From Diadema antillarum (taxonomy: Eukaryota), in the NCBI RefSeq assembly GCF_040938485.1, contig NW_027270973.1:186001-250000 (forward strand): a stretch of 64,000 nt of DNA, given 5' to 3'. A model generated the notes under the pieces. It was not told the origin of the DNA. It ran no database searches and saw nothing but the letters and a program-made list of their open reading frames with translations. The position numbers and the translations under genes are program-made. The stretch's first letter is position 1, and every line of letters starts with the position of its first letter. Shown here one piece after another: positions 4,404 to 40,166 of this stretch.

Positions 4404-6019
4404 AAAAAAAGGAAGGGCGGAAGAGATCAAAGAAAGCAAATGAAGTGTTTAGTTTTCTTATGCTTGAAAGGTCATATGAAATATATAAGTTTGTCCTGTT
4501 ATAGACCTCTACTCGCTACATTCGAACAAACATCACTCTCCACAAGGAAATGGACACACACAATTCTTTTTAAATGTTTACAGCCAAAGAAATGCATCAT
4601 TTCAATGCAATATGCCAGCTACTTATATTGCGGATAATAATCATACATTACAAATCATATGTCCGCGAACAACGACACAGATCTTGTCCCCAAAGCTGGT
4701 CTTTCAAACTGAAATCATTCCCTTGTGGCTAAATCAGAGTGACTCAACTCTTTCTTGCAAAACTTGAACATTATGTCAAGTCGTTGTGACCTCATTACAA
4801 ACAACCCCATTTTCCGTTAGAAGTTATACAGATATTGTATAATTGTTGATAGTGTTATATTAAGTGGTACGCGCAGGATAAGGATCATAGAGTTGCTGCA
4901 AATTTTTTTTTTCTTGAATCTTAGTATTATGAGGTGAAGTTGTCATTTCGCCTTCTCATTCTCAAGGGTTGCTGGTTTGTCAATTCATTTGTGCGTGAGA
5001 ACCCCATTAGTGTGTGCTCTGGGTGAAACATGTCTTATTACTTTTATCATGAGGCTATATTTGATTCACTTTTATTTGCATGTAGTTACGTCATTATGAA
5101 TCTTTCACTTCCATTTATCAGTTATAAAGGTTTTCACATCCTCTCATTTATATGATTCTCTCTCTTATCAAAAAGTGTAGGTTTATACATACAAGCTTAC
5201 ATGCACGATACGTTGATATGATTATATACGTAAACAACCAAATGCGTAATGATATGCTCCACACCGATACTTAGGACCATAGGATTGAATTGACATCAAT
5301 TGTATAGGAGATGATGACCCATCCTCTCTGTACAGTAATTGAACATAACCTGTGTCTAGCATTATCAGAACAATTCAACTTGACTGGTGGAAAGATAACA
5401 CGATTGACATACTATGGCCATGATTGGCATGGATACTTTACGCCAAAATAATCTTCAGCGAAACTTTGATCTCAACTCTTTGATAGGATAGACCTTTCTT
5501 CTGTGAGGGTTGTTCAAAGGACGAACTTAATATACGGTCTGCTCCTAAATTTCTTGCATCCTGTCATAAACAAAGGCAAACACGTGAGTAGGGATTATAA
5601 TAGGATCATAACAACAAGGGCACGCGTTTCGAGTGAGAAGAAAGCAAAGAGATTAGTGTAATCTCGTTGGAAGAAAGCTACTGTCTCAGTGTATTGTTTG
5701 TGCGTCGGTTCAATTGCAGCGCGGCTGTCATGCTTTCAGTCTATACCTGAGGAATGGAACTACATCAGCCAGGGAAAGAACTCGAGTGACAAATCAGTTA
5801 TGATACGAACTACGTCCCAGTCTGTGCCGTTATTACCAAACCTCATTTGGTCCTTTGATTTGACCTGTCAGACTTTCTCTGAATGGAAACTTATGAACTT
5901 CCCAACGATATCCGGCCATACGGGGAATCGAAAAAAAAAATATTTCACTTGGCTGCACACGTCAAACGTTCTCACCCAACATGCCTTATACTAAATTAAG
6001 GTCGTATACACTTTCCAAC

Positions 6020-6176
6020 ATGGCTGATTGATTACACTCTCTTCTCGATCACTAAACTCTATGTAAACTATTGATAACATACACAGAGATCAGTGTTCTC
6101 GATCACACTTCAAACTCCTTTCCTACCAAGCGACATCGACGCCTGACTATATAAGTTCAGTAAATTGCAGCTTAAA
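6020..6176 (+). pseudogene. Type C pmar1-like exon-1 remnant 1
   Basis: ATG GCT GAT TGA (early stop); an insertion between duplicated TTCTCGATCAC; then PTKRHRRLTI-(4-bp TAAG insertion)-FSKLQL; no exon 2 found. Confidence 0.65.
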
Positions 6177-6258
6177 TCCAACCTCGAATATATGTTCATA
6201 CATGCGTATTATATTAATACACAGTGCTCGATATTAGCCATTACCAGGTGAACCGGGA

Positions 6259-6342
<84 letters not shown>

Positions 6343-7069
6343 ACATTTGGGCCACCAAAATTAAAGAAAAACAAACAAAAAAGTCAAGAACATTAAATGA
6401 ATTGGACAGGAGTCAAATGTGATTTGACATCAATGTTTCTCGTATTTCTTTTCTTTTTAAGGCGAAAGAGTTTATGAGGTTAGTACCCCATATGAATTAT
6501 TGAAACTTCGAATCTATTCATTTTCTCTATTTCTTTTTCAATAGTGACAATTTCACGGTGTCTTTTTTGGTTTGATTTGACTGCATTTACTGGAGTCATC
6601 TTGAGCATGGGTGAGAATTTGGTTTTGCTCTTCATAAAGATTTTCAGAGATGAATTATTTGGAGATTAAAACTGACTGTTAGTCATTCCTATTGATATGC
6701 CATAGTCAGATTTACCTTAACGTGCGAAAATTGCCGATACTCTTAAACGATATACATCCAACTTCAACAGTTATATTTGCCATTTATTGATAATCTTAAT
6801 TCAAACTGTAGCAAAAAGCAACGTGACAAGGAATCAAATCACAATCTGCGCTGATTAAGAGACCATACCGAGAAAGTATCCAGGATCTGCAAATAGAACC
6901 AGGTTCTGCAACAGTCGACTGTATTGTTCCTCCACTTCTTTTGTTCCTTGTCGATCTTAGGAAGTTGCTACAAGGGTATTGTTTGGTTTGTCGGCAGCGG
7001 ACCGACAATCAGACCGCTAGTGAACAAAGGAAAAGTCATAGCTCTCCTGTAACAATGTGTAATCTGCGA

Positions 7070-7195
7070 CATGGATTAGGACACTCGCACTCCTCTTTGA
7101 ATAACTGAAGTCGGTGGGCATTCATGAAACTAATGAATAGTTACCTCATACCTAATCCTGTCAAACCCATTGGTCGGTTTATTTGACCAATCAAA
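7070..7195 (+). promoter_or_regulatory. Type A proximal module: Otx, TCF and paired CCAAT sites
   Basis: GGATTA 7073, CTTTGAA 7095, TAATCC 7153, ATTGG 7169 and CCAAT 7187; conserved upstream of A2 and A3. Confidence 0.55.
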
Positions 7196-7386: not shown

Positions 7387-8416
7387 ATGGCTGATTCACT
7401 GCTCTCCCTTCTCCCTCAAGTCTCGACGTCCGTTCCTATCAAAGGTCTTCGTCGTAGACGTCCGACCGTGTTCACCGAATGGCAGCTGGAGAAGCTGAAG
7501 GCTGAATTCGACATCGACCGATATCCCGACATCGTTTCTAGAGAGAAACTGGCTGCCTCACTCGGCCTCGATGAAGACAGAATACAAGTATGTAAAGTAG
7601 ATGTATAAGATGTATAAAATAAGTGATGAAGCAAAGTTGATTATCTCTTGTAATACTGTTTTGATATTACTGAATGTAGATTGATGGTTTCAAATTACAG
7701 CTATCACTTTATTGACTGCTATTGCAATGGAATACCTGATATGAATCAAAATTTGGGAGTCAAACACTCTTAGCACAGCAGCGAGAATATGAATGGCCGA
7801 GGTTAAGAAGCACGTCCTTTTATATGTTCTCCTCGACATTTGATGACAAAAAAAAAAAACAATAAAAAATGTTTATGCATGAAGCAAAATGCTAACGTCA
7901 GATTTGTTCTTTGTTTATCTTCAGGTCTGGTTCCAGAATCGTCGTTCACGCCTTCGTCGAGCTTCACTCAACTCCCTCTCTGCTCGACCAGACACCAGAG
8001 ACAACCAGATCAACAGGTCAACCGACATCAAGGGAACAGAGTCTTCATCCACAAGAAACCGTAAGCGATCAACGGAATGCGACGTCATCGACCAGGAGAA
8101 CACACCGCCGCCCAAGAAGCTCGCCATCAACGACTCACCGATGTCAGTCAATTTCCTGTCTCGTAGCAGCCGATCACCGGGTTCCTGGTCGACTTTCCGT
8201 ATTAGCGACGAACGTGACACCCTGAGTTTACAGCAGACGACATCTCATCAAAAGCGGCAGGGCGCCACCAATCCCTTGATGTCTGTAGACTTCCTCTCCC
8301 GAAGCAGCCGACCGACTTCTTCGTATCCATCGCCATACCGTGAAGGGAGTCTCTACCACAGCCCGTCTCCATTCTACATGGTTGGTCATCCGTATGTCTT
8401 CGTTGTACCGCACTGA
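7387..8416 (+). CDS. pmar1: pmar1/micro1-family PRD-class homeobox repressor, copy A1 (exons 7387-7587 and 7925-8416; 230 aa)
   Basis: Homeodomain RRRRPTVFTEWQLEKLKAEFDIDRYPDIVSREKLAASLGLDEDRIQ|VWFQNRRSRLRR; GT-AG phase-0 intron at codon 46/47; motifs MSVNFLSRSSR and MSVDFLSRSSR. Family assignment is from memory of echinoid Pmar1/Micro1. Confidence 0.8.
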
Positions 8417-12102: not shown

Positions 12103-12459
12103 ACACTGTGATGCTGCCGCACTTTCAAAGCAATTGTAGTCTCTATTACCACAGCCCATCGCCATTCTACATAACGATTTCAGTATAATATATCATCATG
12201 CCATCTTGATCCTGGACATTCGTCGTATAACGAGTCGTAGTGAAACCTGTTCTGTGACGTGGAGCAACGGTTTTGTTTTCGTTATCATAATAATGCACCA
12301 TGACTTTCAGCTTTGAACAGAATTCTGAGTTATGATTGCAAATAAATACATCTGTTTATTACCAAATCATTTTCTTTGGACAAATTTGTCATTCAGGAGT
12401 AATTTTATTAAATTAACATGTATGACCGTTGTGTGGCTGGATGAATTCGTATGAATAGT

Positions 12460-12502
<43 letters not shown>

Positions 12503-14345
12503 ATATAAATGCTTTATCTCTATAGTGAGTGTCTGCATTTTGGTGTTTTTTTATTCTGTTTTTACTGTTTTTTCTCATACACACACACATACACATATAT
12601 ACATTCCATACTGTACATATATTATATAGACATAGTAAAGTAGTCCACGTGTTGTTACTATGATATCAACAATAGAACAGAACATGCTCTCAAAACCACA
12701 GTTTATTTTGATACAATAAAATTGATAATTGGTATCAAAATAAACTGTTGGTATTGACAGCATAAACTTGAGTTTGGTTNNNNNNNNNNNNNNNNNNNNN
12801 NNNNNNNNNNNNNNNNNNNNNNNNNNNNNNNNNNNNNNNNNNNNNNNNNNNNNNNNNNNNNNNNNNNNNNNNNNNNNNNNNNNNNNNNNNNNNNNNNNNN
12901 NNNNNNNNNNNNNCAGAGAGATCAAAGAAAGCAAATGAAAGTGTTTAGTCTTCTTATGCTTGGAAAGGTCATGAAATACACAAGTTTGTCCTCTACTTGC
13001 TACATTCGAACAAACACCAATCTCCACAAGGAAATGGACAAACATAATTCTTTCTAAATGTTCACAGCCAAGGCAATGTAGAATGTCTATACAAGAATAC
13101 TAGTATGCCGCTATGATATGTCTATGAACAATGGCACGGATCTTTTCCACAAATAAGCTCGTGTCCTTCAGACGGAAATCATTTCCCTGTGGCTAAATCG
13201 GAATGACTCGACGCTTTCTTACAAAACTTGAACAGATATCAAGTCGTTATGACATCATTACAAACAATCACATATTCCGTTAAGTAGAGGCTACACGAAC
13301 ATTTAATAATGATTTTGAATTCATATCACACGCATAATACGTATCATAGAGTTTAAAAGGGTTGCCGTAAGATTTACATCTCATTTGTTGAATTACAGCA
13401 CTACGAAGTGAAGTTGTCATTTCGCCTCCTATTTTCAAGGGTTCATAGTGTGCTCTGGGTGAAGCACGTCTCATTGATTTCATCATGAGGCTATAGTCTT
13501 TCTTCACTTTTATCAACATGCATGTATATTTCCATAATTATGAACCTTTCACTTCCATTTATTAGATATAAAAGTTTTCACTTCCTCTAATTTATATTCT
13601 CTCTCTTACAAAAAAGCAGGTTTATACATACAAGCTTACATACACGATACGTTAATATGATTATATACGTACACAATCAATGCATAATGATATGCTTACA
13701 TACGCACATACCTACACCGATACTTAGGACCTACAGGATTGAATGAACATCAATTTTATAGGAGATGATGACCCATCCTCTCAGTACAGCAAATGACCGT
13801 AACCTGTGTCTAGCACTCTCAGAACAATTTTATTCAACTTGACTGATGGAAAGATAACACAATTGACATACTATGGCCATGATTGACAGGGATACTTTAC
13901 GCCAAAATAATCTTCGGCAAAACTTTGATCTCAACTCTTTGATAGGATAGACCTTTCTTCTGTGTGGGTTGGTCAAACAACGAATTTAATTCTATACGAT
14001 CTGCTCCTAAATTTCTTGCATCTTGTCATGAACAAAGACAAACGCGTGATTAGGGATTAGGACCGTAACAATGATGCGCGCGTTTCGAGTGAGAAGAAAG
14101 CCACGAATGACACAGAACTACGTCCTAATCTGTGCCGTTAGTTAATCTCATTGGCCCTTTAAGTTGACCAATCGGACTTTTCCTGAATGGAAACCAATGG
14201 ACTTCTCATCAATAATTGGTCTTAAGGTGAATCAAATTAATAAAGAAGGGGAAAACGGGCACTTTTGGGTTTTTTTTTCTCATTTGGCTCCACACATCAG
14301 GAGTTTTCACCTTATACTGCATTAAGGCTTTTTTCTCTTCCCAAC

Positions 14346-14474
14346 ATGGCTGACTCATCGCACTCTCCTCTCGATCACACTTCAAAGTTCGCTCCTACCA
14401 AGCGACATCGACGACTTGCTATGTTCAACAGATTGCACTTGATATTCTTAAACTGGGCACCAAATCCGACCTGA
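14346..14474 (+). pseudogene. Type C pmar1-like exon-1 remnant 2
   Basis: MADSSHSPLDHTSKFAPTKRHRRLAMFNRLHL aligns with the MADSSLSLL..PTK..RRRRPTMF start of types A and B, then degenerates; no exon 2. Confidence 0.65.
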
Positions 14475-16731
14475 AATGATATTCATATAATACATAATAT
14501 TTACATGATCATACAGGGCTCGACATCAGCGTTGACCAGGTGGCCAGGGGCCACAGCTGCCAAAAAAGAAGAAGAAAAAATATATATATGATATAAATTT
14601 CAACCACAAATTTCAGCGAGAGAGAAGCAGTCATCTGAAGCTGATTCGATCGGGTATCAAATCGACGGGTTTACCACGAACTGTCCTATCTCAAATAATG
14701 ACGTTTTGAGAAAATCGCTTCTAAACATTGTATCTCTCTTTATGCCTTACTTTTCCAGAAATGGCTTATTGCTTATCTATAAAACGCAGGCCATAAGAGA
14801 GAACAGTACCTAGGGATAGTTTGTGCCAAAGAACATGTCACAGTGCCGACAAAGTTTCTAGCAAGAAACTTGTAAACTTACATATTAGTTTACGGTTTCA
14901 TAGAAAAGCAGTATTGAGCCGTATTTATGCGCAGATTCTTTGCACGATCTGTCCTATCTTGCGCGCACTGCAGTAGCGAGTCTTCGAACTTTACCACGAT
15001 GTGACCTATGTCGAAATCAGCGGAGAATCGAGTGTCGATGCTTTACCACGAACTGTCCCATGTTCACGGACCGTATAATATGCATGGGGCGGAACCAGAG
15101 ATGCATTTTTTTATTTGTAATCTTGATGCCCCACTTGACCATTATAACTTAGGATATGGACTCGCACTTTTTAAATACAAATATAATCAAATAGGCCAAT
15201 ATACCAACCAGGTTCTCACGGTTTGTGATAGGCCTCTATTGGAGGGAAAATTCGTAGTTAGCAATGATTTTTCATCTACGTTAACTACACTGTTCATGCT
15301 GATTGTTTCTTTCACCGTATTAAAGGAATCTTGAAGGAAGGGGTGGGAGGCTTCTCAACTTGTCCTTTCAAACATATTTTATAATAATGTCCTTATCGAG
15401 TAGTAGTCAACTAAGCAATGCTTGTAGCATTTTCTGTAATAAATTTCACTGAATACCAACCTTCAGAAATTTAACGACCCTTAACCAAAAACTTGGATAA
15501 TCATGAATAAACACACATGCGGGCACAACCGCACANNNNNNNNNNNNNNNNNNNNNNNNNNNNNNNNNNNNNNNNNNNNNNNNNNNNNNNNNNNNNNNNN
15601 NNNNNNNNNNNNNNNNNNNNNNNNNNNNNNNNNNNNNNNNNNNNNNNNNNNNNNNNNNNNNNNNNNNNNNNNNNNNNNNNNNNNNNNNNNNNNNNNNNNN
15701 NNNTACACAATAACATCTAGATAGCAAACAACATGCATACAAGCAACGCACATACAGACACAACGCACAAAGTGCATAAAGTGCACGACGAAAAATATTA
15801 AATGGGAAAGAAAAATCCCCCCTAACCAAAATACGCATACAAACATCTTTAATCTTGCATAGAGAGATGTACAGAGAGACAGAGAATGACACATAATTTG
15901 AAGCACAACTTTTTTTATGTGTTTACTGACTCACACAACATTTTATTGTAATTAGTCAATAACGTCATCAAACAAAATAATTACCATGCATTAAACGTGA
16001 AATGAGAAAATAATTGCAGATTATGAAATGGGAAACTTTTACAACAGAATTCATATCTAACGAACTGTATGTTCTTTAAAACAATAATATTTCGATTCCT
16101 GTTTAAGTTGCATTGTCGTAGAGAATCACATAACATGGCATGAACAGTTAGTGTAAAAGCATTGACAAAAGAGGGTATTATTAAATTGTTGCACTGCAAG
16201 ACTGTCATTATCTTTTTATCAAGAAACAGGTTTATCATTATCGAAATTCGACAGTATATTCAATTTCCCCCTTTTAATGTGATCCCATTGAAATACTAGT
16301 TAAACATTAGTGAACAGAAGTTGCGGTTACGCTGTCAGCAAAACATTGAAACCATGAAGTCCTGCAATGCAATGAAATGAAATAACTGCATGCAGTGCAT
16401 GTTCTGGTGATAACACATTTACATTTCCAGCTTAAGATAAAAACTACAAATCCTCACCGAAGGGATCATAATTCAGCAGTCAATAATGGTGTACAAGTCA
16501 GACATGTTGATCTCCTAGGCTGTAATATTTAGGCTATCAAACATACATGTATGAAAAACACTTTGCAACTGCGCCTACTGAAGCATCGTTAGAAATCACT
16601 AATGTGCAAAGCTTTATTTTTCTCAAATGAAAAACGATATTGCATGGTTTACTCTAAGTGTGAATGCATGATAAACAAGGCCATATTACCATTGGCCTTA
16701 AAAATTTATGTATCAACCTGAAGTATATGGT

Positions 16732-17256
16732 TTACACAGTAGCTGCAAAATTGCTGAACAATAACAAGCTCCTAAATTCTTCATGTCCCAAATACGTTGC
16801 TTTTCCTAAGGTATTGAGGAATAATCTTTTGCACGCTTTTAGCTTACTGCCCGCTAGAGGTAGAAGATAATGAATAGCGCGTTTCTTCCTTAGCGCCATG
16901 TCATTTACTTTTGTTTCCGTGTGATTAGCGATCCATTGCCTTTCCTTCCCAAGTCCTCGAGGTCGAGGTACGTCTTCCGGATTTCTTCAGTTTGCTGTGC
17001 TGAATTTATGACAACCATGACTGACACGTCGACATGAAGTGGATAAACAGATTTATCGGAATGAACTTTCTCGTACGGATTAGCCTGTTTGTCTTTTCAA
17101 TGTGGTGCTTTAGTGCAACATTTCTTTTCTCTTGACAACTTTATACCGAGTTCCTGGGCGTATTCTCTTTACATACAAGCGGCTACCCCTTCCATCCTCT
17201 GGATACCTTCTACATCAAAATCTTCGGGATGAATCGAACTTCGTGCAGAAATCTGG
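16732..17256 (-). pseudogene. Frameshifted Sola1-like transposase N-terminal fragment
   Basis: Open frame 16980-16741 reads KERQWIANHTETKVNDMALRKKRAIHYLLPLAGSKLKACKRLFLNTLG, like the VCKxFFLxTLG motif I recall from Sola1 transposases; upstream frames give CRRVSHGCHKF and EEIRKTY. Confidence 0.6.
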
Positions 17257-17509
17257 TAGGCCTACGGTCTACGCTACGTAGCTGCTCCTACTGTTATCAA
17301 AGATCAGTCATGGACGGCTTTACACTTCACCGCAGATCAATTCCAAGGAATGCAGGTGGTTTTTAGTTTATAATAAGACTAGACTAGGTCTGAGGACAAT
17401 GATCTTCAAATATTTGGAAAGAAAATCCATGAATTCGTCCCCCCCCCTCCTGTTTCGGCCCTCCTTTCCAGTCCCCACTCCAGCACCCTGCAGTCCGTGG
17501 CTAGACTAG

Positions 17510-18780
17510 CTAGTCGTCGAGAGTGTCACTGTGTCGCCTCCGCCCCGATTCCGTAGTTCTTTGAAGTGCAGCTAAAGTGATGTCATCCTCTAGATCCAAC
17601 ATTTCTGCCATCTCCATTGTTGTTTGTTGAACTTGATTTTTGATCTGTATTTGAAAACGAAGAACGATCCCAGTGCTAATATGAATACTCCAAATCAATG
17701 CATCAACAGATTTTTAACATCGTCATCATTGATCCATTCATTTCAGGTTCTTTCCTTCAACCTAACTCTTTGTCATAAAGGGGAATTTACTTTATTCATG
17801 TAAGCCATTTTCTATAGCGCCCCTATTTCTCCTACTTTTTCCTTTCTCTTGTTCCACAACTATAGTTTTCTTATACATGTACACGTTATTTATTCTCTAC
17901 TTTAAAAAGAAATAAAATGTACAATTGTGTTGTGTCAAGTTATACATAGGTGAAAAATATGAAATACCTGCTGTTTTTTGTTCTCTGCACCGATTCCGTA
18001 GTTCTTTGAAGTGCAGCTAAAGGGATGTCATCCTCTGGATCCAACATTTCTGCCATCTCCAGTGGTGAACTTGATTTTTGGTCTTCATCTGAAAACGAAC
18101 AGTTTTTCAAGGTTAATGCCAATACTCACATTGTGACGATTTTGAACATCAACATCATTGACCCATTCATTCAATGATCTGTCCTTCAATTCAATTTTTT
18201 TTTTCTCATACTCAATGAACTTGATTTGTTGCTCTTTATCTAAAAATGAAGAACCTTCCAGAGTCAATATCAATACTCACAATTAATGTAGTGACAGATT
18301 TTGAACATCACCGCCATTGAAACATTCATATAATGTTATTTCCTTCAACCTAACTCTGTTATAATTGAATTTACATTATTCAAGTAAGTCTATTATCTAT
18401 ACTGCCCCTATTTCTCCTATTTTTTTTCTCTTGTTTCCCTTACAAAGTTTTCTCATACGCAATATTTATTCTCTACTTTAAAAACAAATAACGTGTAAAT
18501 TGTGTTGTGTCAAGTTATAAATAGGTGAAAATACAAAATACCTGCTTTTTTTGTCATCTGCCCCCGATTTCGTAGTTCTTTGAAGTGCAACTAAAGGGAT
18601 GTCATCCTCTGGGTCCAACATTTCTGCCATCTCCAGTGGTGAACTTGATTTTTGGTCTTCATCTGAAAACAAACAGTTTTTCAAGGTTAATGCCAATACT
18701 CACATTGTGACGATTTTGAACATCAACATCATTGACCCATTCATTCAATGATCTGTCCTTCAATTCATTTTTTTTCTAAT
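17510..18780 (-). repeat. About 540-bp tandem duplication inside the transposon (two near-full copies plus a partial)
   Basis: MAEMLDPEDDIPLAALQRTT-like segment occurs in ORFs at 17510, 17940 and 18478, with shared flanking sequence. Confidence 0.85.
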
Positions 18781-19399
18781 ACTTATATTCATATGATTGA
18801 AAATTCATATCAACTCAAATACTTGCATTTTTAATTTTATAATTTTGTCATGTATATAAGCAAATCCCAAGGGATAAATTCTCAAGAAATAAATGTTCGC
18901 AGATTCTGTATTAAAGCCGACGTTTCACCAGCAGTTATTCGACTTCTATGTATGTATTGAATGCCAATCCACCAAACACGTACACAAAAGACAAGAAAAT
19001 CAGAAATAAAGGAACGTGAAAAAATTGAAGGAAAGGTACATGCCAAATTTTGTAAGCATTGCTATTAATAGATTCCTTAATATTCCACTTACCACAATTA
19101 TTATTCATCTTACTATAATTACCACAATTTTGTTTTACATAGTAGAGGCTGATTCATGCAAATTACTCGTTTCATTTTGCTGAACTTGAAAATACCATAT
19201 ATACGGTGCATTATACAGTATCCCCCCCCCAAAAAAAAAAAAAAGAAAAAAAAAAAAGATCGGATTTTCGCACTGATAACCCCCAATATGATTAAACCAT
19301 CTACATGCTACTTCAGGTTTTACAGTACCATGGGATAACATTTTAACTCCATTTTGCAGAAAACCCCATTTAATTTTTAAGTAGAAAATAGACCCATCT

Positions 19400-21060
19400 A
19401 TTTAGTTGTACATATGATCTGCCAGACTAGTGATAGAGATCTAGTAGAGGTAGAGCTACATAAAGCCTTGTTAGACATCAGTCAGATAATTCAATAGACT
19501 CTGACGTTTGACACTACGCCTAGATAGGGTCTATTCTAGAATCATTATATCAGCAGTAACTGTTAGACTTGAGTTCCAACTTCTATGTCTAACTCGGTTA
19601 AGTGACGTTGTCTGGAGCAGTCCAGTCGTCCTACGAGTACGGGGAAACCGAAACAGAAACAGATTAATATCTATCTATGTTAGGCATAATCGATCTAGGC
19701 CAAGGGCTAGCCCAAATCCAGATAAGGGTCTAACAAAAACAAATGAGATTAAACTTTAGTTTGAAGCACCTCCTTTTGCAGCGCCAGCAGGGCCTAGTCT
19801 TGATAGACACTGAGTCTAGATGAAGAGAGATCTAGACCACAGTTTGGTCAAGTTGACTTTTATAGGCTCGAGTCTAACATTAACGTTAGTTCATGTAGAT
19901 CCCACTTAGCAGCTAGGCCCTAACGTTAGACTGTACAGTTGTATTCAAGTTTGATGTGTAACGTTAAATATACATAGACATACTACAATCTGGATTTTTT
20001 TTCTAATACTAGTACTATAATAGGGAAGTACCGGTACGGCGGTAGAACATTAGGCCTAACGTTTGTACTAGAATGTCTATAAATTATACGCCCTAACTGT
20101 TAGTTTTATAACGCTAAGATAATTGGTCTATATTACTTGTTCTAGACTCTAATAACAGGTCAGATCCTGTGTCCCTATTTAACGTTACAGCACTAGCGTA
20201 AGCAAGGTTAGTGATATACAGGGCTGCCACCTCTCACTCATTGAGAGTGAGATTCACTATGACTCATTTGGGTCCTTTCTCACTTCTAAAACTTTATTTC
20301 ATTTGCATGCATTTGTTATTGATCTCACTCATTTTGACTCCTAAATTATAGCATTGGCCTGGAGTCTCACTCTCAACTAGTTTCCAATGTTTGCAGCCCT
20401 GGATATAGAAACTGTTGAGTTCTACTAGAAACTCTACACTAACGTTAGTAATGGTTAGGCCTAGATCTAAAAGGCTTGGCTTACTAAGTATCTAACTGGA
20501 CGTTAGCTAGATTCTAGACACAAGTTGTCTAACGTTTAAGACCAAAGAGATCGTTTAACAACTGAGTTAGGGTCCAACTGAGATCTTCAAGTTCTAACGT
20601 TAACATTTTAGGCCTAACAGTAGTAACATTGTTACTCCCGTAACGTTAGAACTGACCAGTTAATTTAATGTTAGTGTCAGTAGCCTACCTCTATTATTAC
20701 GGTTTACTGCTCGTTAGTACTGTAGGGTCTAGAAACTGAACTAGTTAGACTGTCTAACGTTATCAGTGTTAACTTACAATGTAAATACTAACTTACCATA
20801 GTATTACCCTATTGTAGTATTAACGTCGTAACGTTCGAACTAACCTGTATGAGTAACATTAATGTTACTGTTAGAACTAATCAGATAATATGGGCTCTTT
20901 TTACAATTCTGACATGTTAAGAACAACTCGGATTTTTTTTTTTCTGACGTTAGGCCTAACCAAGTTAGATGATATCAATCACCCCAAACCATCATCGACA
21001 ACGTTAACGTTACAGCGACTAGGTATTAACGGTCTGGCTTAGAAGTTAAGGTTTAATACA
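19400..21060. other. Domain enriched in short palindromic words (TAACGTTA, TAGGCCTA, CTAG)
   Basis: Nine exact TAACGTTA between 19881 and 21012; four TAGGCCTA (20051, 20455, 20609, 20951). Confidence 0.8.
20219..20401. mobile_element. Small MITE nested in the Sola-like element
   Basis: CAGGGCTGC...GCAGCCCTG termini with GATATA repeated on both sides. Confidence 0.55.
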
Positions 21061-27696: not shown

Positions 27697-28811
27697 ATGG
27701 CTGATTCGTCGCTCTCACTTCTGCCTCACGTCCCGATGTCTGCTCCTTCCAAGCGACCTCGTCCTCGACGTAAGACTAGGTTCACCGAATGGCAACTCGA
27801 GAGACTGAAGGCCGAGTTCGACATCGACCAATATCCCGACATCGTTTCCAGGAAGAAACTGGCAGCTACACTCGGCCTGAATGAAGACAGAATACACGTA
27901 GGTTTCATTGTCATACGGCATATAACTATCTGGCATGAAAATATGTCGACGAATATTTAAGTTAGGCCTATCAACTAATTGAAATCATTTCAATTGGCGT
28001 TTAAATGACGCTATATTGATATTACTGATAGTCTGAGTTTCTTAGTATGAAATATCCAATTTGATTATGTGAAGCAGCATAATAGCATAATAAGCAGGAC
28101 ATTATAGGAGCAAATAAAGTAACCTCTTATCATCAACAATTCTTCTTGCTTATATATTACCAAATGAATATTGATTCAGCTTTTATACAAAACAAACTGT
28201 AATCGAAGCTGTACAGCTAGTGCTTCAAGAGGCCGAATTGAGCAGGCTTTATATTAGGATAGAAGTATACACTGTTTTTGTTTTTTTGTTAGGTTGATTT
28301 TTAACTAAGTTTAGTCTTGTTTTCTTCATTTTCTTTCCAGGTCTGGTTTCAGAACCGTCGCTCACGTCATCGTCCATCCTTCCTCAAGTCCTCCTCACCT
28401 TCCATCAACAACCGTCTCGACGTTGCTGAAAGTGAACCCGACTGCCTGCGTAAGAGGAAACACTTTGCTACAAGCGACGTCCTCGACCAGGAGAACACAC
28501 CGCCGCCCAAGAAGTTCGCCATCAACGACTCACCGATGTCAGTCGATTTCCTGTCTCGTAGCAGTCGATCACCGAGTTCCTGGTCAATCTCCCACATCAG
28601 CGACGAGCGTGACATCATGAGTTTGCAGCAGACAACATCTCATCGAAAGCAGCAGGGCGCCACCAATCCCTTGATGTCTGTAGACTTCCTCTCCCGAAGC
28701 AGCCGACCGACTTCTTCGTATCCATCGCCATACCGTGAAGGGAGTCTCTACCACAGCTCGTCGCCATTCTACATGGTTGGTCTTCCGCATGTCTTCGTTG
28801 TACCGCACTGA
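27697..28811 (+). CDS. pmar1: pmar1/micro1-family homeobox, type B, copy B2 (exons 27697-27897 and 28341-28811; 223 aa)
   Basis: Homeodomain RPRRKTRFTEWQLERLKAEFDIDQYPDIVSRKKLAATLGLNEDRIH|VWFQNRRSRHRP; same intron position; two MSVDFLSRSSR motifs. Confidence 0.78.
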
Positions 28812-29127
28812 ACGCTGTGATGCTGCCACACTTTCATAGGAGTGACATACCACCCTTCATTACCACAGCCCATCGCTTATATTCTTCATAACGATCCTAA
28901 TGTCATACCACCTTGATCCTGGACATTCGTCGTGACGAGTCGTTGTGAAACCTGTTCTGTGACGTTATCATTATGATGTGAAGCAAAATTTTGAATTATG
29001 GTTGTAAATAAATGTCTATTACCAAATCAACTTCTTGAACAATATACTTTTTCATTGAGGAGTATTTGTTGTGTAATTAGCACGCACGTGTTTCTTGATG
29101 CATTTGTATTGCTTGTATATATATATG

Positions 29128-29181
<54 letters not shown>

Positions 29182-32192: not shown

Positions 32193-33600
32193 TTAAGGTC
32201 TGATTTTCCGCCGCAAGTCATCTCACAAGCAAAAAAAAAAGCAACAACAAGAACAAAAAGTCCTCATATTTTTGCTGCCACTTTCCTCCCACTTTATATT
32301 TCATGCAAAAGAGTGGGACATCCGATCCCTGTAAAGTGTGCGTGTGGGGGGGGGGGGGCACCAAGCTCCCCCCCAAGGCTGCGCCAGTCCGGTTATGGGC
32401 TTGTAATCGTGGTGATGGTGACCATCGGATTTACGCCGTTGCATACACACAAACATATCGCCCATNNNNNNNNNNNNNNNNNNNNNNNNNNNNNNNNNNN
32501 NNNNNNNNNNNNNNNNNNNNNNNNNNNNNNNNNNNNNNNNNNNNNNNNNNNNNNNNNNNNNNNNNNNNNNNNNNNNNNNNNNNNNNNNNNNNNNACGGAA
32601 GAGATCAAAGAAAGCAAATGAAGTGTTTAGCCTTCTTATGCTTGGAAAGGTCGTATGAAATATTAAAGTTTTTCCTGTTGTTAATAGACCTCTGCTCACT
32701 GCATTCGGACACACACCAATCTCCACACTGAAATGGACTCACAAAATTCTTTCTACATGTTCACAGCCAAGGCAATGCATCATTTCAATGCAATATGCCA
32801 GCTACTTATATTGCGGATAATAATCATACTTATACAGGTCGACGAATAACGACACAAATCTTGTCCCCAAAGCTGGTTTTTCAAACTAAGATCATTCCCT
32901 TCTGGCTAAATCAGAGTGACCCAACGCTTTCTTGCAAAACCTGAACAGATGTCAAGTCGTTATGGCATCATTACAAACAAATACATTTCCGTTAGAAGCT
33001 ATACAGATATTATTTAATTGTTAATGTGTTATAAATTAAGTGATAGCGCAGAATACGGATCATAGAGTTTCAAAGAGTTGCTGTAATCTTTTTTTCTTGA
33101 ATCACAGTAGTACTAGGTGAAGTTTTCATTTCGCCTTCTTATTCTCAAGGGTTGCTGGTTTGTCAATTCATTTGTGCGTGAGGACCCCATTAGTGTGTGC
33201 TCTGGGTGAAACACGTCTTATTACTTTTATCACGAGGCTATGTTTGATTCATTTTTTATGTAATTTTACATAATCATGAATCTCACCCTTCCATCTATCA
33301 GACATCTGTCAGATATAAAAGTTTTCACTTCATCCCATTTATATTTTCTCTCTTATCAAAAAGCAGGTTTATACATACAAGCTTACATACATGATCCGTT
33401 GATATAATTTTACGTACATAGCCAAATGCATATATGATATGCTTACATGCGCACACCGATACTTGGGACCTATATGAACATCAATTGTATAGGAGATGAT
33501 GACCCATCCTCTCTGTACAGTAATTGAACATAACCTGTGTCTAGCACTATCAGAACTATTCAACTTGACTGATGGAAAGATAACACGATTGACACTCTAT

Positions 33601-34146
33601 AGGGCTTTTTACACTTGTGTTTCTTAACCCCGGACTTTCTCTGACCCAGGACTATCGTTAGTCCCGTACCAATTTTTTCAGCTTTTTACACTCGCCAATT
33701 AGTCCCGTACTATCTCTTGTCCGGGGCTAAGGAGAAAACTGACCTTTTTACACTCGTATTTCTTAGCCCCGGACTTTCCAGACCACATGAATATTCATAA
33801 TTACGCTGTGTACTGTACACGTACACGCACGCACCGGCAGCACTTGATTGCCTCGTTTCTGATTGGTCAGTGAGGGTCGGACTTCGTCTCCGTCGCTTAG
33901 CCCAGGATTATTTTTTCGTTCTGTTTACACTCACTTGCTTGGCACCGCAATTGCGGTGCTAACCCCTGCTATTTTGCAGGGCCAGATAGTACCGTACTAT
34001 CGGTGGGGCTAGCCCACTTTGGCAAAAACGAGTGTAAACAGAAAGTGGGCTAAGGATAGTCCCGTACCAACGGTGGGGCTAAGGCCCCCCCTTAGCCCCA
34101 CCGATAGTCCGGGGCTAAGCAAAAATTTACAAGTGTAAAAAGCCCT
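33601..34146. mobile_element. PIF/Harbinger-like MITE
   Basis: TIR AGGGCTTTTTACACTTGT / ACAAGTGTAAAAAGCCCT; internal AGCCCCGGACT and AGTCCCGTAC repeats; empty sites at about 5413 and 13872. Confidence 0.75.
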
Positions 34147-34759
34147 TAAGGCCAGGATTGACAGGGATACTTTACGCCAAAATAATCTTCGGCGAAACTT
34201 TGATCTCAACTCATTGATAGGATAGAACTTTCTTCTGTGTGGGTTGGTCAAAGAGCGAAATTAATTCTATACGATCTGCTCCTAGATTTTTTTGCATCCT
34301 GTCTTAAACAAAGGCAAACGCGTGATTAGGGATTATAATAGGATCATAACAACCAGGGCGCACGTTTCGAGTGAAAAGAAAGCAAAGAGATTAGTGTAAT
34401 CTCGTTGGAAGTAAACCATTGTCTCAGTGTATTGCTTCGTGGGTCAGTTTAATTGCCGCAAGCTTCTCATCCTTTTAGTCTATACCTGACAAGTGGAACT
34501 ACATCAGTCAGTGAAAGAACCCAAGTGACAGATAGATCAGTTATGACACGGAGCTGCGTCCCAATCTGTGCCGTTATTACCCAATCTCATTCGTCTTTTG
34601 GTTTGACCTGTCAGACTTTTTCTGCATGGAAACAGGTGAACTTACCTAGGACATCTGGTCATACGGGGAATCAAAAAATATAAACATTTCACTTGGCTGC
34701 ACACATCAGAAGTTCTCACCTTACATGCCTTATACTAAAGTCTCTAACGACTTTCCAAC

Positions 34760-34973
34760 ATAGCTAATTCAAAATTATTAAATTTGGTTCAGTACTTTTT
34801 ATTCTACGCCAATTCTGAAAATGCAGTCATTGTCAAATTTCGCCGGATTTTTGCGACTTATTAGATAATAATTTGAGTGCGACAAGCGATCCATACGGTG
34901 AATATTGTGTAAGCTCGGTGATCCATGTCAACAAAAGATACAGCTTTCACATTGGGCACAGGCCAGGAAAAAA

Positions 34974-35009
<36 letters not shown>

Positions 35010-35405
35010 TCCCAATATGAAAGCGTTATCTTTTGCTGACATGGATCAACGAGCTTACACAATTCACCGTATGGAACGCGTGTCGCACCCAAATTATTAT
35101 CTCATAAGTCGCAAAAAATTGAAAATGACTGCATTTATAGAAATTGGCGTAGAACAACCAAATTTAATGATTTTGGTATCATGGTCTTCTGCGGAAGATG
35201 TTCTTTCTAATGATGTCAAAAAATATATCACTTTTAGAATGCAAGGTACTGAAAATCCACCGTTCCGCTTTTTTTGGGACACCCGGTATAAACTATTGAT
35301 AGTATACACAGAGATCAGTGTCACACTTTAAAGTCCGTTCCTACCAAGCGACATCGACGCCTGACTATATTCAGCAAATTACAGCTTGAGATTGATGTTA
35401 AAGTG
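34760..35405 (+). pseudogene. Type C pmar1-like exon-1 remnant 3, split by TE insertions
   Basis: CCAAC-ATA-GCTAATTC (mutated ATG) at 34760; after the insertion, 35331-35405 reads KSVPTKRHRRLTIFSKLQLEIDVKV. Confidence 0.65.
34776..35286. mobile_element. Foldback element (arms about 34781-34916 and 35051-35165 around (TG)n) plus a mariner-type right end
   Basis: The arms are reverse complements; the segment ends TTTTTTGGGACACCCGG-TA, a Tc1/mariner-type terminus. Confidence 0.65.
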
Positions 35406-36317
35406 TGGACCAATTACTTTACTCTGCTCGACATTTGCGGTGACCAGGTGCCCCGGGAACATAGAATACCCCCCCCCCCCCAAAAAAAAAAAGAACAGAA
35501 CAGAACAAAACAAAACAAAACAAACAAAAAACAAAAACAAAAACAAAAACAAAAACAAAAAACATGTTGTACCACCAAAATAAAAGAAAAAAAAGTCAAG
35601 AACATTGAATGAATCGGACAGGAATTAAATGTGTTTTGACAACACATTGTTTCTCGTTTATGTTTTTAGGGCAAAAGAGTTGATGATGTTAGTACCCCAT
35701 GCAAATTAGTCAAACTTCGACTATATTCATTTTCTCTGTTGTTTTTTTTTTAAATGACCGTGAATGAGGTTGTATTTAATGACAATTTCACTGTGTCTTT
35801 TTTGGTTTGATTTTTACTGCACTCACCAGAGTCATCTTGAGCATGGGCGAGAATTTGGTTTTGCACTTCATAAAGGTTTTCAGAGATGAATTATTTGGTG
35901 ATTGAATCTGACTGTTAGTCATAAATTCCTAGCGATGCCGAAGTCGGATTTACTTATACGTGCAAAATTACCGTTACACTTAAACGATATACATCAAATT
36001 TCAACAACTATTTGCCATTTTCTGACAATTTTAATTCAACCTAAAGCATGAATCAACGTGATGCTGAATCAAATCAAAATCTGCGCTAATTAAGAGATCA
36101 TATCGAGATAGTATCCAGGATCTGAAAATAGAATCAGGTTCTGTAATAATCGACTGTATTGTTCCTCTACTCCTTTTGTTCCTTGTCGATCTTAGGAAGG
36201 TGGTACAAGGGCAAACTGAAGGGTATTGTTTGGCTTGCAGGCAGCGAACCGACAATCAAACCGCCAATGAACAAAGGAAAAGTCACAGCTCTCTTATAAC
36301 AATGTGTAATTTGCGAC

Positions 36318-36438
36318 ATGGATTAGGACACTCACACTCCCCTTTGAATTGCTGAAGTCTGTGGGCATTCATGAAACTAAAACTTTACCTCATTCGCTAA
36401 TCCTGTCACGCCTATTGGTCGGTTTATTGGACCAATCA
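36318..36438 (+). promoter_or_regulatory. Type A proximal module, copy A3
   Basis: GGATTA 36320, CTTTGAA 36342, TAATCC 36398, ATTGG 36414, CCAAT 36432. Confidence 0.55.
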
Positions 36439-36622
36439 AACAACTTTGCTTGTTTATGGCTTGAGCGAGTGATATTTGGCTTCTCCAATTCATAACCCAC
36501 TTAATCACTGCAAGGCTACTTTGGTAGTATCACCACACGTCATTCAGATTTTCTTGAAGTCAAGTCGCACCTCTGAGGTATTTTCTACAAACCGGCATCT
36601 TTACAAAACCGATCCAATCAGT

Positions 36623-37877
36623 ATGGCTGATTCATCGCTCTCCCTTCTCCCTCAAGTCTCGACGTCCGTTCCTACCAAAGGCCCTCGTCGTCGACGTCCG
36701 ACCATGTTCACCGAATGGCAGCTCGAAAGGCTGAAGGCTGAATTCGACATCGACCGATATCCCGACGTCGTTTCCAGAGAGAAACTGGCTGCCTCAATCG
36801 GCCTCGACGAAGACAGAATACAAGTATGTAAAATCAGGGCTTTGTAAAATAATTGTTAAGCTAAAGATGTTCTTCACCTACTTTGTATGAACGAATAAAT
36901 GCAATCAACCACGGAAGAAGAATCCTGTAAATGATTTCATTTGATCTCATAGATATCTATACATTTATGATAGAGATGTATACATATATCATCAAGTCTA
37001 TATATGTTATAAATTGTTTGAATGACTTTGAACGACAAAATGATAAGACGGTTGTCAAATGTAGCTGCAGTTTACACTTTGGATTTTTTTAACATTTTGA
37101 TTTAGAATGAATATCATATTACCTACGTAAATATAGAACTCAAATATTTTCAGCACCAGCCAGACGGAGCTAGCAATTCATTATTTTTTTCGAAATCTGT
37201 GACTTATTTGTGGTTAATCCGTCGTTGCATAAAAACAATTTGCCATGCCCTCCAACTATTATCTAAATATCCTCAAATACATTGTGTATCAGTTTCATTC
37301 TAGGATTTATGTCCATTACAAGTTCTGTTTCTGCACGAAGCACATAGTTATGATAAAGTCATGTCTTTCTTTTCTTTATCTTCAGGTCTGGTTTCAGAAT
37401 CGCTGTTCGCGCCTTCGTCGAACTTCACTACACTCCCTCTGTACTCGACCAAACATCAGCGACAACCAGATCAACAGGCTAACCGACATCACGGGAGCGG
37501 AGTCTTCATCCAAAGGAAAGCGTAAGCGATCAACCGAATGCGACGTCATCGACCAGGAGAACACACCGCCACCCAAGAAGCTCGCCATCAACGCTTCACC
37601 GATGTCAGTCGATTTCCTGTCTCGTAGCAGCCGATCACCGGATTCTTGGTCGACTTTCCGTATTAGCGACGAGCGTGACATCATGAGTTTACAGCAGACG
37701 ACATCTCATCGAAAGCAGCAGGGCGCCACCAATCCCTTGATGTTTGTAGACTTTCTCTCCCGAAGCAGCCGACCGACTTCTTCGTATCCATCGCCGTACC
37801 GTGAAGGGAGTCTCTACCACAGCGCGTCGCCATTCTACATGTTTGGTCATCCTTGCGTCTTCGTTGTACTGCACTGA
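36623..37877 (+). CDS. pmar1: pmar1/micro1-family homeobox, copy A3 (exons 36623-36823 and 37386-37877; 230 aa; R53C)
   Basis: Intact spliced ORF with a 562-bp divergent intron; helix 3 reads VWFQNRCSR; second motif reads MFVDFLSRSSR. Confidence 0.78.
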
Positions 37878-40166
37878 ACACTGTGATGCTGCCACACTTT
37901 TTATAAGAGTGACTGAGATGTGATGTGTAATATCACATGTTGAGATATTTATTTGACTCTTTGCTGTAAACAAACCCTTCAGCATGCTTCCGACTTCAGA
38001 ACTATGTTTCTGTTATCTGAGACACTCGCGATGTTTCTGACTTGAATTCAGCAACATTGTTGTTTATCATGATCTCTATTAATAAACATTGCCTTTTGAC
38101 ATGTAGATCTTATTCATTTCAAGCTGTTTCATTCCATTGGCATTTGTAGAGTGATCGCATGATTTTGTTTCTTGTTCATGGATGTGTGTACATGTATGAT
38201 AAGTTACACTGTGTTTCCGTGTGTGCGTGAGGCATATGTGTGTGTGTTAGCGTTTATGTGTTAAAGCTCGTAGGTGTGTTTGTGCTTGAGTGAAATTAAA
38301 AGTGAGGTGAAAATGGAGTATCGATGAAACAGTACAGAATAATGACAGAAATTAATCAGGTTAAAAGCAAAAGCAAAAAACAAACAAACAAACTTCCGTG
38401 CGACTTTGAGTAACACGTACGTACATACAATAATCCACAAGCAGCACATACATATCTCATAATATCATGATCATGATGACAGATATTCTTTTTAATTCTT
38501 GCCTTTAACAAATCTACAGCACACAAGGAGTGAAGAAGAAATTTGTTTAACACAAGTTTATAGCACGAGGGTCTGAGGGCATACTCTTAAAAAAAACCCA
38601 CACACTTTGAATTGATGAGTTAACTTTTTCACATAAAAAGTGTAAATTCAAACTCAAGAATATTCCTATAAAACCAGACAAGCATTGATAAGTTATGACC
38701 TTTCAAAGTTTCTCTCTTTTTTTTTCTTGTCGAAAGAGAGATGTAGATCAAAAAGACATGTTTAATGCAAATTAGTTTGAGTAATGTTCTCGTGACGGTA
38801 CGAATCTTTGAATTAGTTGGTGGGTGAAAATTCTATGGATCTTATTTTCTTGTTAATATATGACTTTATAACACATCAGATCAATAGTTGGAAGAAGTTC
38901 AGCTAAAAGATATGAGACAATTCTTTTATTGCAGTGGTAAATCAATCAATTTAACTTAAGGAGAGTCAGTGAAGGTTTATGGTCCTCACGCCATCACCTC
39001 ATAAAGAGTGATCTAAATTGTCAGATATTAGTATGCTCTGATTGCTATCACCATTTTCTGAGCATGTATTGTTATCTTCGAAAGTCTTTATTCTACTTGG
39101 AGGTGGGTTGGAAGGGATTCTAATTCTGATGACACCTTCATTGCAATATTATTTGTTTGATTTTGACAGTCTTTACCAGCGTCAACTTTGACATAGTGGA
39201 ATTTCACTATACTCTTGACAAATATTTGATATAATGTATTAGTGAGAGATTCTGTATCAGTACTAGCCTTGTTTAAATCCTCCATGTACTCAGAATCGCT
39301 ACTATATAGTACAATAATAACATTCGCTCTTAATGCTTGAAATTAACTGTGCCAAATCCGAGCAGAGGAGCTACGTGATTAGAGAGACCAGAAGATAGAG
39401 AGGGCCAAGAATAGTTGGAGACCACAGAGTTAGAGTCAGGAGATCCCCTTTCCTTGTACATCATGCTCCCTTCCATATTAACCAACTAAACTCTATCAAC
39501 GCTGTGAATGTGACGAGGATCTTGGTTGAAATGCCCAAGAGTTAACGAGTTAACTGGTGAACAACGACATGACAAGTTGAGAAACTGTACACCACGACAA
39601 GACAGAACTTTGGTTTACACCAGGCTGGGGTGTAACGAACTCCAAATAGTCAATTGGTGTCATCAGAGATGTTGAAGCGTCCTGTAAGGTTGCCACAACG
39701 TGGACGGCGATGGTGACGAACTGTTTAAGGAAACAGTGAGAGCAGACCGGTCAACGGACGCTCCAGCCCTTGGACTAGCTCGATCGACATGCAGACGAGA
39801 ACCTCTTCCCGCGACCATGCCGATGTCGAGATAAGTGGCCACACCCACTAACATAATTTTCCCTATAAACCAAATCCCTCCCTTTCCCATAGATTAAGAT
39901 GGTAGAATATGAAACGGTCTCCAAAGGTGTAGAAGAGTTAAGTGATCAGTGATGTGTTCAATTGTGTAATAAGAAAAGGAATTTGTTTGTGTTTAAGTAT
40001 TTGGCTCAGACCTACGAGAAGGCAGGTCGGTGAATAAATATGCTGTCAGCAGCATTAATATTATCCATGTAAATTCTATCCTTCCCCCGCATTTTATATT
40101 CACTGTTGTTGTGAAGCAATATTCAGTCTCTTTCTGACGTTTGGAAATTTGTTGATCATTGGTGTC

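What the first reader, a model, noticed from the sequence alone, without database searches (positions are those of the whole stretch)
4420..39330. pmar1/micro1 cluster built from a repeated three-gene (C-A-B) cassette undergoing birth and death
Seen: three units each begin with the same AGAGATCAAAGAAAGC block (about 4422, 12916, 32600) and run C-remnant, A gene, B gene (unit 3 lacks B). This gives four open ORFs, one frameshifted gene and three stubs. Known: echinoid pmar1/micro1 is a tandemly multiplied early repressor in the double-negative gate upstream of hesC. Inference: the unit of duplication was a heterotypic triplet, not a single gene, and copies are dying independently.
Basis: partly seen in the sequence, partly recalled or inferred. 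Interest (0 to 1): 0.8.

Follow-up and report, generated by a model that had tools for sequence, protein, structure and literature searches.

The report
Diadema pmar1 array, repeated A–B cassette
This stretch of the long-spined sea urchin (Diadema antillarum) genome holds a real tandem array of pmar1/micro1-type early-embryo repressor genes, built from a repeated block of two different gene subtypes plus an old gene fossil; it is a tidy new example of a kind of gene cluster already known in other sea urchins.

Summary
The window (Diadema antillarum contig JBFRCO010000085.1, about 186–250 kb) holds three collinear units, each a C block with an exon-1 stub, then an A gene, then a B gene.

- **Genes:** A1, A2, B2 and A3 are intact two-exon genes. 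B1 is dead: its start codon is lost and exon 1 has a 7-nt deletion.
- **Family:** the proteins have the full Pmar1/Micro1 architecture. Their best hits outside Diadema are named Pmar1/Micro1.

- **Supported:** the repeat unit is heterotypic. The C→A, A→B and B→C junctions recur between units and in gap-free Diadema setosum sequence, which has two tandem B–C–A units. So the cassette predates the species split and is neither allelic nor an N-run artefact.
- **Not supported:**
  - The C stubs did not die independently. One old fossil with the same lesions sits in every C block of both species.
  - Unit 3 "lacking B" is the array edge (C–A–TRIM-like gene), also seen in D. setosum.
  - The shared "start block" is simply the first readable DNA after two N runs.

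Segment trees conflict between units, so the units are mosaics. The repressor tail is homogenised between subtypes.

Tandem pmar1 arrays, subfamilies, two-gene units and pseudogenes are already published for other urchins. First-stage notes on another piece of this genome describe similar pmar1/micro1 clusters.

The parts
3835..4326 (+). Relic homologous to the region 0.8-1.1 kb upstream of the third intact subtype (D) genes. It marks the left edge of this sub-array.
   Evidence: blastn 76-84% to L005 8897-9198 and 67% to L002 20380-20694
4418..6800 (+). C block of unit 1; the exon-1 fossil (stub C1) lies at 6020-6172
7153..7193 (+). A1 promoter core: TAATCC, ATTGG and GACCAATCA, about 200 nt upstream of the ATG
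7387..8416 (+). A1 gene (identical to protein P0002), exons 7387-7587 and 7925-8416, intact, 230 aa
11039..12102 (+). B1 pseudogene, exons 11039-11232 and 11632-12102: start codon lost (GTA), 7-nt deletion in exon 1, exon 2 still open
12780..12913 (.). N run between the B1 3' flank and C2; intergenic; not read
12914..14620 (+). C block of unit 2 (5' part); stub C2 at 14346-14449 keeps ATGGCTGA and lacks the 54-nt insertion
14621..22836 (.). About 8.2 kb of DNA private to unit 2, splitting its C block. Holds the N run 15536-15703, inverted repeats 17289-17436 / 21885-22031, and repeats of roughly 580 bp at 17538-18783.
23654..24698 (+). A2 gene (identical to P0001), exons 23654-23854 and 24207-24698, intact, 230 aa, with R57C at the end of helix 3
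27697..28811 (+). B2 gene, exons 27697-27897 and 28341-28811, intact, 223 aa
30060..31418 (.). 165-bp satellite, 8.4 copies, lying between the B2 flank and C3
32466..32594 (.). N run directly before C3; continuity not testable; not read
32595..36100 (+). C block of unit 3, with private inserts at about 33600-34147 and a palindrome at 34770-35175; stub C3 at 35321-35392 (ATG part lost)
36623..37877 (+). A3 gene (identical to P0009), exons 36623-36823 and 37386-37877, open frame, R53C in the recognition helix (codon 37404-37406)
37878..44324 (+). A3 3' flank running into a TRIM-like (RING/B-box) gene; this is the array edge, collinear with D. setosum L008 and D. antillarum L003

Best explanation
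This is one sub-array of the Diadema antillarum pmar1/micro1 cluster.

Ground plan. The plan is an old heterotypic block: B gene, C block, A gene. The C block is the fossil promoter and 5' exon 1 of a long-dead family member. A third intact subtype, D, sits elsewhere in the cluster.

History.
- The block was multiplied as a unit by segmental tandem duplication or unequal crossing-over before D. antillarum and D. setosum split.
- The copies have since been reshuffled and partly homogenised by non-allelic recombination or gene conversion. Adjacent A genes resemble each other within each species. The repressor tail is homogenised across subtypes.
- B lineages and the A/B/D subtypes stay distinct across the two species.
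- Individual copies decay on their own. B1 is dead. A3 carries R53C.

Function, inferred from the family and not shown here. The intact genes would encode paired-class repressors with a nuclear localisation signal and two eh1-like repeated peptides. They would be switched on transiently in vegetal blastomeres and repress hesC, as in the double-negative gate. Many copies would supply dose during the short cleavage cycles.
For: Species and position: A2 is 100% identical to a D. antillarum protein, and locus L004 maps to window 22654-25698.

Family:
- Pfam Homeodomain E=2e-11 on exon 1.
- Best hits outside Diadema are Scaphechinus Micro1/Pmar1-related, H. pulcherrimus homeobox protein Q5TLG4 and S. 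purpuratus 'paired class homeodomain repressor', with E down to 1e-41.
- Shared architecture: MAD start, homeodomain, RKRK, TPPPxKK and two MSVDFLSRSSR repeats.

Cassette:
- Self-comparison shows collinear C, A and B segments.
- The A-to-B interval of units 1 and 2 is collinear with D. setosum L009.
- B-to-C adjacency is seen in L001, L002, L006 and L008.
- D. setosum L010 has two gap-free B-C-A units, each with its stub.

One old fossil: the same lesions are present in all stubs of both species.

Subtypes are old:
- Protein clades A (97/93), B (100/99) and D (100/100) each contain both species.
- Synonymous divergence (dS) between A and B is 0.43-1.17 outside the tail.

Mosaic units and homogenisation:
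- C1 pairs with C3 (100/100). A1 pairs with A2 (99/97). A3 groups with P0007/P0012. B1 groups with the L002, L006 and L010-left B genes (100/100), apart from B2.
- AU tests reject (A1,A3), (C1,C2) and (B1,B2).
- dS in the tail is 0.12-0.22, against 0.43-1.17 in the rest of the gene.

Promoters: a core of TAATCC, ATTGG and GACCAATCA about 200 nt upstream of the ATG is shared by A, B and D.
Against: - No expression data: no RNA run was listed. Activity, timing and the link to hesC rest on inference from other species.
- Three N runs lie at or inside unit boundaries. The true copy number and the join before unit 3 are therefore unverified.
- No bona fide Phb sequence could be included, so the Pmar1-versus-Phb placement rests on named best hits and shared architecture.
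- The clades used in the AU tests were named after the trees had been seen.
- Within-species similarity of adjacent A genes could reflect parallel recent duplications rather than conversion.
- Tail conversion may pull all Diadema copies together in the protein tree.
Confidence: 0.8

Rival explanations
1. Assembly artefact: units 1 and 2, or all three, are uncollapsed haplotypes or contigs mis-joined at the N runs, not true tandem copies.
For: N runs sit at 12780-12913 and 32466-32594, exactly at unit boundaries, and at 15536-15703 inside unit 2. A second D. antillarum contig of 513 kb encodes near-identical proteins, for example P0016 against P0015, so haplotigs do exist in this assembly. Copy number of this family varies between individuals in P. 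lividus (PMC5370098).
Against: - B1 and B2 are about 79% identical, and each is closer to copies elsewhere. AU rejects a (B1,B2) pair at p=9e-51.
- C1 and C2 are 76% identical.
- Unit 2 carries 8.2 kb of private DNA.
- The B-flank to C-block join across the first N run matches gap-free loci.
- D. setosum has the same tandem pattern with no N at all.
Confidence: 0.06
2. The array grew by independent single-gene duplications and insertions. The C-A-B order is coincidence, or is imposed by selection.
For: Segment trees for C, A and B disagree between units, as they would if the segments had separate histories.
Against: The non-coding junctions C-to-A, A-to-B and B-to-C are themselves homologous between units and between species. 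Single-gene copying would not reproduce this. Conflicting trees are expected from recombination inside an array.
Confidence: 0.04
3. The C block is not a dead gene. It is a functional regulatory module of the A gene (an enhancer or upstream transcript) that happens to contain exon-like sequence.
For: Every one of the nine C blocks seen is followed by an A gene in the same orientation. The block is retained in both species.
Against: - In the orthologous pair L003/L008 the stub region is 92% identical. That is lower than the A promoter (96.7%), exon 1 (97.5%) or the intron (98.2%).
- The stubs carry stops, indels and private insertions.
- In unit 2 the block is split from A2 by 8.2 kb, and in L001/L003 by about 25 kb.
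Confidence: 0.07
4. These genes are Diadema Phb-type paired-class genes or a separate lineage, not orthologues of the Pmar1 that drives the double-negative gate.
For: No authentic Phb could be placed in the tree. Diadema copies form their own branch against all other urchin Pmar1 (97/97). Identity to camarodont Pmar1 is only 43-48%.
Against: All named best hits are Pmar1/Micro1. The whole-length architecture, including both repeated peptides and the C-terminal end, is shared.
Confidence: 0.08

Closest known systems
hbox12/pmar1/micro1 multigene family of Paracentrotus lividus (Cavalieri, Geraci, Spinelli 2017, PMC5370098)
   Same: Two-exon genes. Many clustered copies. Some in head-to-tail two-gene units. 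Three subfamilies with different promoters. Expansion attributed to segmental duplication. Transposon relics nearby. Some copies with broken frames.
   Different: - In Diadema the subtypes differ strongly in coding sequence (A and B about 70% identical as proteins), and both Diadema species share them. The P. lividus paper reports species-specific genes with similar coding sequences.
- The Diadema unit carries a conserved gene fossil between B and A.
- No expression data exist for Diadema.
Tandem pmar1 arrays of S. purpuratus, H. pulcherrimus, L. variegatus and Heliocidaris (PMC4709884; bioRxiv 10.1101/2022.03.03.482868)
   Same: Clustered tandem paralogues (10-20 per species). Homeodomain, nuclear localisation signal and two eh1/repeated-peptide motifs. 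A few pseudogenes per array.
   Different: Those arrays are described as several almost identical copies. The Diadema array alternates two old subtypes and has a third subtype in inverted orientation elsewhere in the cluster.
Heterotypic tandem repeat units such as the sea urchin early histone gene repeat (from my own knowledge, not checked here)
   Same: Several different genes are copied together as one repeating block, and the array is partly homogenised.
   Different: Far fewer copies (2-3 adjacent units), much older and more diverged units, and pseudogenes inside the unit.

Membership tests
Pmar1/Micro1/Hbox12 paired-class repressors | Paired-class (Q50) homeodomain | tested here: met
   Pfam PF00046 E=2e-11 on exon 1, with WFQNRR at the start of exon 2
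Pmar1/Micro1/Hbox12 paired-class repressors | Two exons split by one intron | tested here: met
   GT-AG introns of 337-562 nt between homeodomain positions 46 and 47 in all five genes. The two-exon structure is stated for the family in PMC5370098.
Pmar1/Micro1/Hbox12 paired-class repressors | Nuclear localisation signal plus two eh1-like repeated peptides in the C-terminal half | tested here: met
   The alignment with S. purpuratus, H. pulcherrimus, L. variegatus and Scaphechinus proteins shows RKRK, TPPPxKK and two MSVDFLSRSSR motifs. The domain list is given in bioRxiv 10.1101/2022.03.03.482868.
Pmar1/Micro1/Hbox12 paired-class repressors | Closest named relatives are Pmar1/Micro1 | tested here: met
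   E=1e-41 to Scaphechinus Micro1/Pmar1-related. The S. purpuratus cluster includes AAL38537.1, 'paired class homeodomain repressor'.
Pmar1/Micro1/Hbox12 paired-class repressors | Separation from Phb in a tree | not tested
   No Phb sequence was retrieved. Yamazaki et al. 2020 is not held.
Pmar1/Micro1/Hbox12 paired-class repressors | Transient early expression in micromeres under Otx and beta-catenin/TCF | not testable with these tools
   No RNA run was listed. There are only motif hints: TAATCC about 200 nt upstream of the ATG in A, B and D, and CAAAG-type motifs.
Pmar1/Micro1/Hbox12 paired-class repressors | Represses hesC; overexpression converts cells to the skeletogenic fate | not testable with these tools
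   Needs embryo injection.
Heterotypic tandem cassette (block duplication) | Same order and orientation, with homologous inter-gene junctions in several units | tested here: met
   All nine C blocks seen are followed by an A gene, and eight of the nine are preceded by a B gene.
Uncollapsed alleles | The copies are each other's closest relatives, at allelic divergence | tested here: not met
   A (B1,B2) pair is rejected at p=9e-51. Identities are 76-79% for C1/C2 and B1/B2.

The most novel reading that the evidence does not exclude
Diadema keeps three anciently split Pmar1 subfamilies (A, B, D) in a fixed B-fossil-A module because they are sub-functionalised early repressors with different expression domains or targets. 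This would parallel the three expression subfamilies of P. lividus. Under this reading, gene conversion keeps their Groucho-recruiting tails alike while the homeodomain arms and promoters diverge. The double-negative gate of an early-branching euechinoid would then be run by a small team of distinct repressors rather than by many copies of one.
Probability: 0.2. Interest if true: 0.6.

Novelty: new member of a known kind. Interest (0 to 1): 0.38.

Why it matters
Pmar1 sits at the top of the sea urchin skeletogenic network, and how its multi-copy locus evolves bears on how the double-negative gate arose. Diadema branches early among euechinoids, and in the library I searched only two 2026 reviews mention pmar1 together with Diadema; the one I opened does not describe the Diadema locus.

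Three points stand out:
- A clear two-subtype cassette with a shared fossil is present.
- The cassette is conserved between two Diadema species.
- It shows both birth-and-death and local homogenisation.

Together these give a clean case for dating duplications. They also provide subtype-specific probes to test whether the subtypes do different jobs. It is a useful locus description, not a new principle.

Tried and rejected
- **Expression:** a search for RNA runs holding A2-B2 listed none.
- **Phb outgroup:** a word search restricted to the homeodomain of the D type returned only Diadema proteins. Yamazaki et al. 2020 is not held. Names of the divergent S. purpuratus and L. variegatus relatives P0044 and P0047 gave no Phb label. 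The large representative search was not used, because the family was not in doubt and it was flagged as costly.
- **Origin of the stubs:** I tested whether they descend from the D subtype. They share the K-L residues of FTKLQ, but are equally distant (55-63%) from A, B and D exon 1. The origin is left open.
- **Constraint on the stubs:** I tested for extra conservation and found none.
- **Left edge of the repeat:** I asked whether 4418 is a meaningful unit start. With the DNA upstream of unit 1 as query, homology to other copies does begin at 4418-4422. In units 2 and 3, however, the same point is simply where the N runs end.
- **N runs:** I did not fetch any locus covering the N runs and did not try to read them.
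- **Literature:** one search returned nothing relevant.
Full report
**What is there.**
- It lies inside long homologous blocks:
  - C blocks: 4418-5645 matches 12917-14101 at 76% and 32596-33600 at 84%.
  - A regions: 6800-10446 matches 23059-26773 at 90%; A1 and A2 match A3 at 80-87%.
  - B regions: 10609-12549 matches 27259-29242 at 79%.
- Translated searches and splice-site inspection give five two-exon genes with GT-AG introns between homeodomain positions 46 and 47.
  - A1, A2, B2 and A3 are open.
  - B1 has GTA in place of ATG and a 7-nt deletion in exon 1.
- An exon-1 profile built only from copies outside the window finds exactly three further hits, one per C block. They are 14346-14449 (E=1e-9), 35321-35392 (E=3e-8) and 6091-6172 (E=1e-5).
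- An exon-2 profile finds no matching relic.

**The N runs.**
- None touches an exon or intron.
- First run (12780-12913): its left flank is collinear with B 3' flanks and its right flank with C blocks. In gap-free related loci these two are 50-63 bp apart. Order and orientation are supported.
- Run inside unit 2 (15536-15703): it lies in about 8.2 kb of private DNA. That DNA separates two complementary halves of one C block.
- Run before unit 3 (32466-32594): the join could not be tested.
- The flanks of several runs are CA/GT-rich. The place homologous to the right edge of the 58685-58854 run follows a GT-rich tract in three copies within the window. The runs may therefore stand for simple sequence. 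I did not read or fill them.
- Because two runs end at the start of C2 and C3, the statement that every unit begins with the same block partly reflects where readable sequence resumes.

**Whose genome, and which family.**
- A2 is identical to a Diadema antillarum protein. Locus L004 places the window at about 186-250 kb of contig JBFRCO010000085.1.
- Exon 1 matches Pfam Homeodomain (E=2e-11).
- Outside Diadema the best hits are named Micro1/Pmar1 proteins of Scaphechinus, Hemicentrotus and Strongylocentrotus.
- The alignment shows the whole architecture is shared: homeodomain, RKRK, TPPPxKK and two MSVDFLSRSSR repeats.
- I could not obtain a Phb sequence, so that finer placement is untested.

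**Subtypes.**
- Protein trees give three clades: A (97/93), B (100/99) and D (100/100).
- D is a third intact type, absent from the window apart from an upstream relic at 3835-4326.
- Each clade contains both D. antillarum and D. setosum.
- Synonymous divergence between A and B is 0.43-0.52 in exon 1 and 0.87-1.17 in the 5' half of exon 2. One orthologous species pair shows about 0.065. The subtypes are therefore much older than the species split.

**The cassette is real and old.**
- The same contig has B-C-A-D(inverted) at 281-302 kb (L002).
- It also has a B-C-A unit split by about 25 kb at 116-147 kb (L001 plus L003).
- D. setosum chromosome OZ188189.1 has B-C-A-D(inverted)-A, B-C-A-TRIM, and two tandem B-C-A units with a 10.85-kb period and no N. 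Each unit carries its stub.
- The A-to-B interval of window units 1 and 2 is collinear with the D. setosum tandem pair.
- Shared non-coding junctions rule out independent single-gene copying.
- The gap-free sister-species array rules out an N-run artefact.

- The stub in every C block of both species has the same 6-7-nt deletion in the basic arm and the same loss of its 3' part. All except C2 also share a 54-nt internal insertion.
- C therefore died once and was copied as a fossil. Only secondary lesions are private, such as the palindromic insert in C3.
- The stub is equally distant from A, B and D exon 1, and it is not unusually conserved.
- C3-A3 followed by a TRIM-like gene is collinear with D. 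setosum L008 and D. antillarum L003. Unit 3 is therefore the array edge, not a unit that lost B.

**Mosaic history.**
- C1 pairs with C3 (100/100).
- A1 pairs with A2 (99/97), while A3 groups with P0007, P0012 and P0011.
- B1 groups with the L002, L006 and L010-left B genes (100/100), apart from B2.
- AU tests reject (A1,A3), (A1,A2,A3), (C1,C2) and (B1,B2). The groups were named after the trees had been seen.
- In both species the upstream B of a tandem pair belongs to one old B lineage and the downstream B does not. Adjacent A genes, by contrast, resemble each other within each species.
- The tail (codons 126-230) has a dS of 0.12-0.22 between subtypes.
- This pattern fits birth-and-death of subtypes together with local conversion or unequal exchange.

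**Function (inferred).**
- All three subtypes share a promoter core of TAATCC, ATTGG and GACCAATCA about 200 nt upstream of the ATG. B1 has TAATGC instead.
- dN/dS is 0.3-0.8.
- No RNA run was listed.
- By homology the intact genes should be early repressors acting upstream of hesC.

**Novelty.**
- Already published for other urchins: tandem arrays, two-gene head-to-tail units, three subfamilies, segmental duplication, copy-number variation and pseudogenes (PMC5370098, PMC4709884, bioRxiv 10.1101/2022.03.03.482868).
- Only two reviews mention pmar1 together with Diadema. The one I opened does not describe the Diadema locus.
- This is a new member of a known kind.

Noticed in passing
window 38274-43556 and 58855-64000: The A 3' flank plus the start of the TRIM-like gene is duplicated (74-86% identity). 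The second copy has no A gene in front of it and begins right after the N run 58685-58854. L003 holds a third copy. A larger pmar1-plus-TRIM block was therefore also copied.
   Followed up: partly
window 42522-50278: A TRIM-like gene (RING and a weak B-box; ORFs 43329-44324 and 48863-49969) is collinear with a 546-aa B-box gene next to P0012 in D. setosum. About 4.7 kb (44236-48974) is extra in the window.
   Followed up: partly
window 7153-7193, 23420-23460, 36398-36438; also around 10841 and 27498: A, B and D genes share a promoter core (TAATCC, ATTGG, GACCAATCA) about 200 nt upstream of the ATG, so their promoters are not wholly unrelated. In the pseudogene B1 the TAATCC reads TAATGC.
   Followed up: partly
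window 12913/12914 and 32594/32595: Two N runs end within 2 nt of the same homologous position, the start of the C block. Flanks of several N runs are CA/GT-rich, so the runs may hide simple sequence. Not read.
   Followed up: partly
window 14621-22836: About 8.2 kb private to unit 2. It has 148-nt inverted repeats at 17289-17436 / 21885-22031 around repeats of roughly 580 bp, and looks like a non-autonomous mobile element.
   Followed up: no
window 30060-31418: A 165-bp satellite, 8.4 copies, 84% matches, between B2 and C3.
   Followed up: no
window 51154-51788 and 54854-55486: A 635-bp inverted repeat at 99.2% identity; young, and probably the ends of a mobile element.
   Followed up: no
window 12136-12172: A 37-nt copy of the end of exon 2, lying just after the B1 stop codon (profile E=0.0016).
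   Followed up: no
window 24237-24239 (A2 codon 78): A2 has Cys instead of Arg at homeodomain position 57 (RLCRAS). A3 has R53C. P0008, on another contig, has His at position 53.
   Followed up: no
L001 11924-13437 and L003 8823-9500: These two loci hold complementary halves of one C block, about 25.5 kb apart on the same contig. They form a B-C-A unit split by a large insertion.
   Followed up: partly
D. antillarum 513-kb contig (proteins P0005, P0008, P0013, P0016, P0017, P0019, P0020): A second contig encodes a similar set of A, B and D proteins, some nearly identical to those of this contig (compare P0016 and P0015). It is either an alternate haplotype or a second cluster. I did not examine it, to avoid reading across the N runs.
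   Followed up: no
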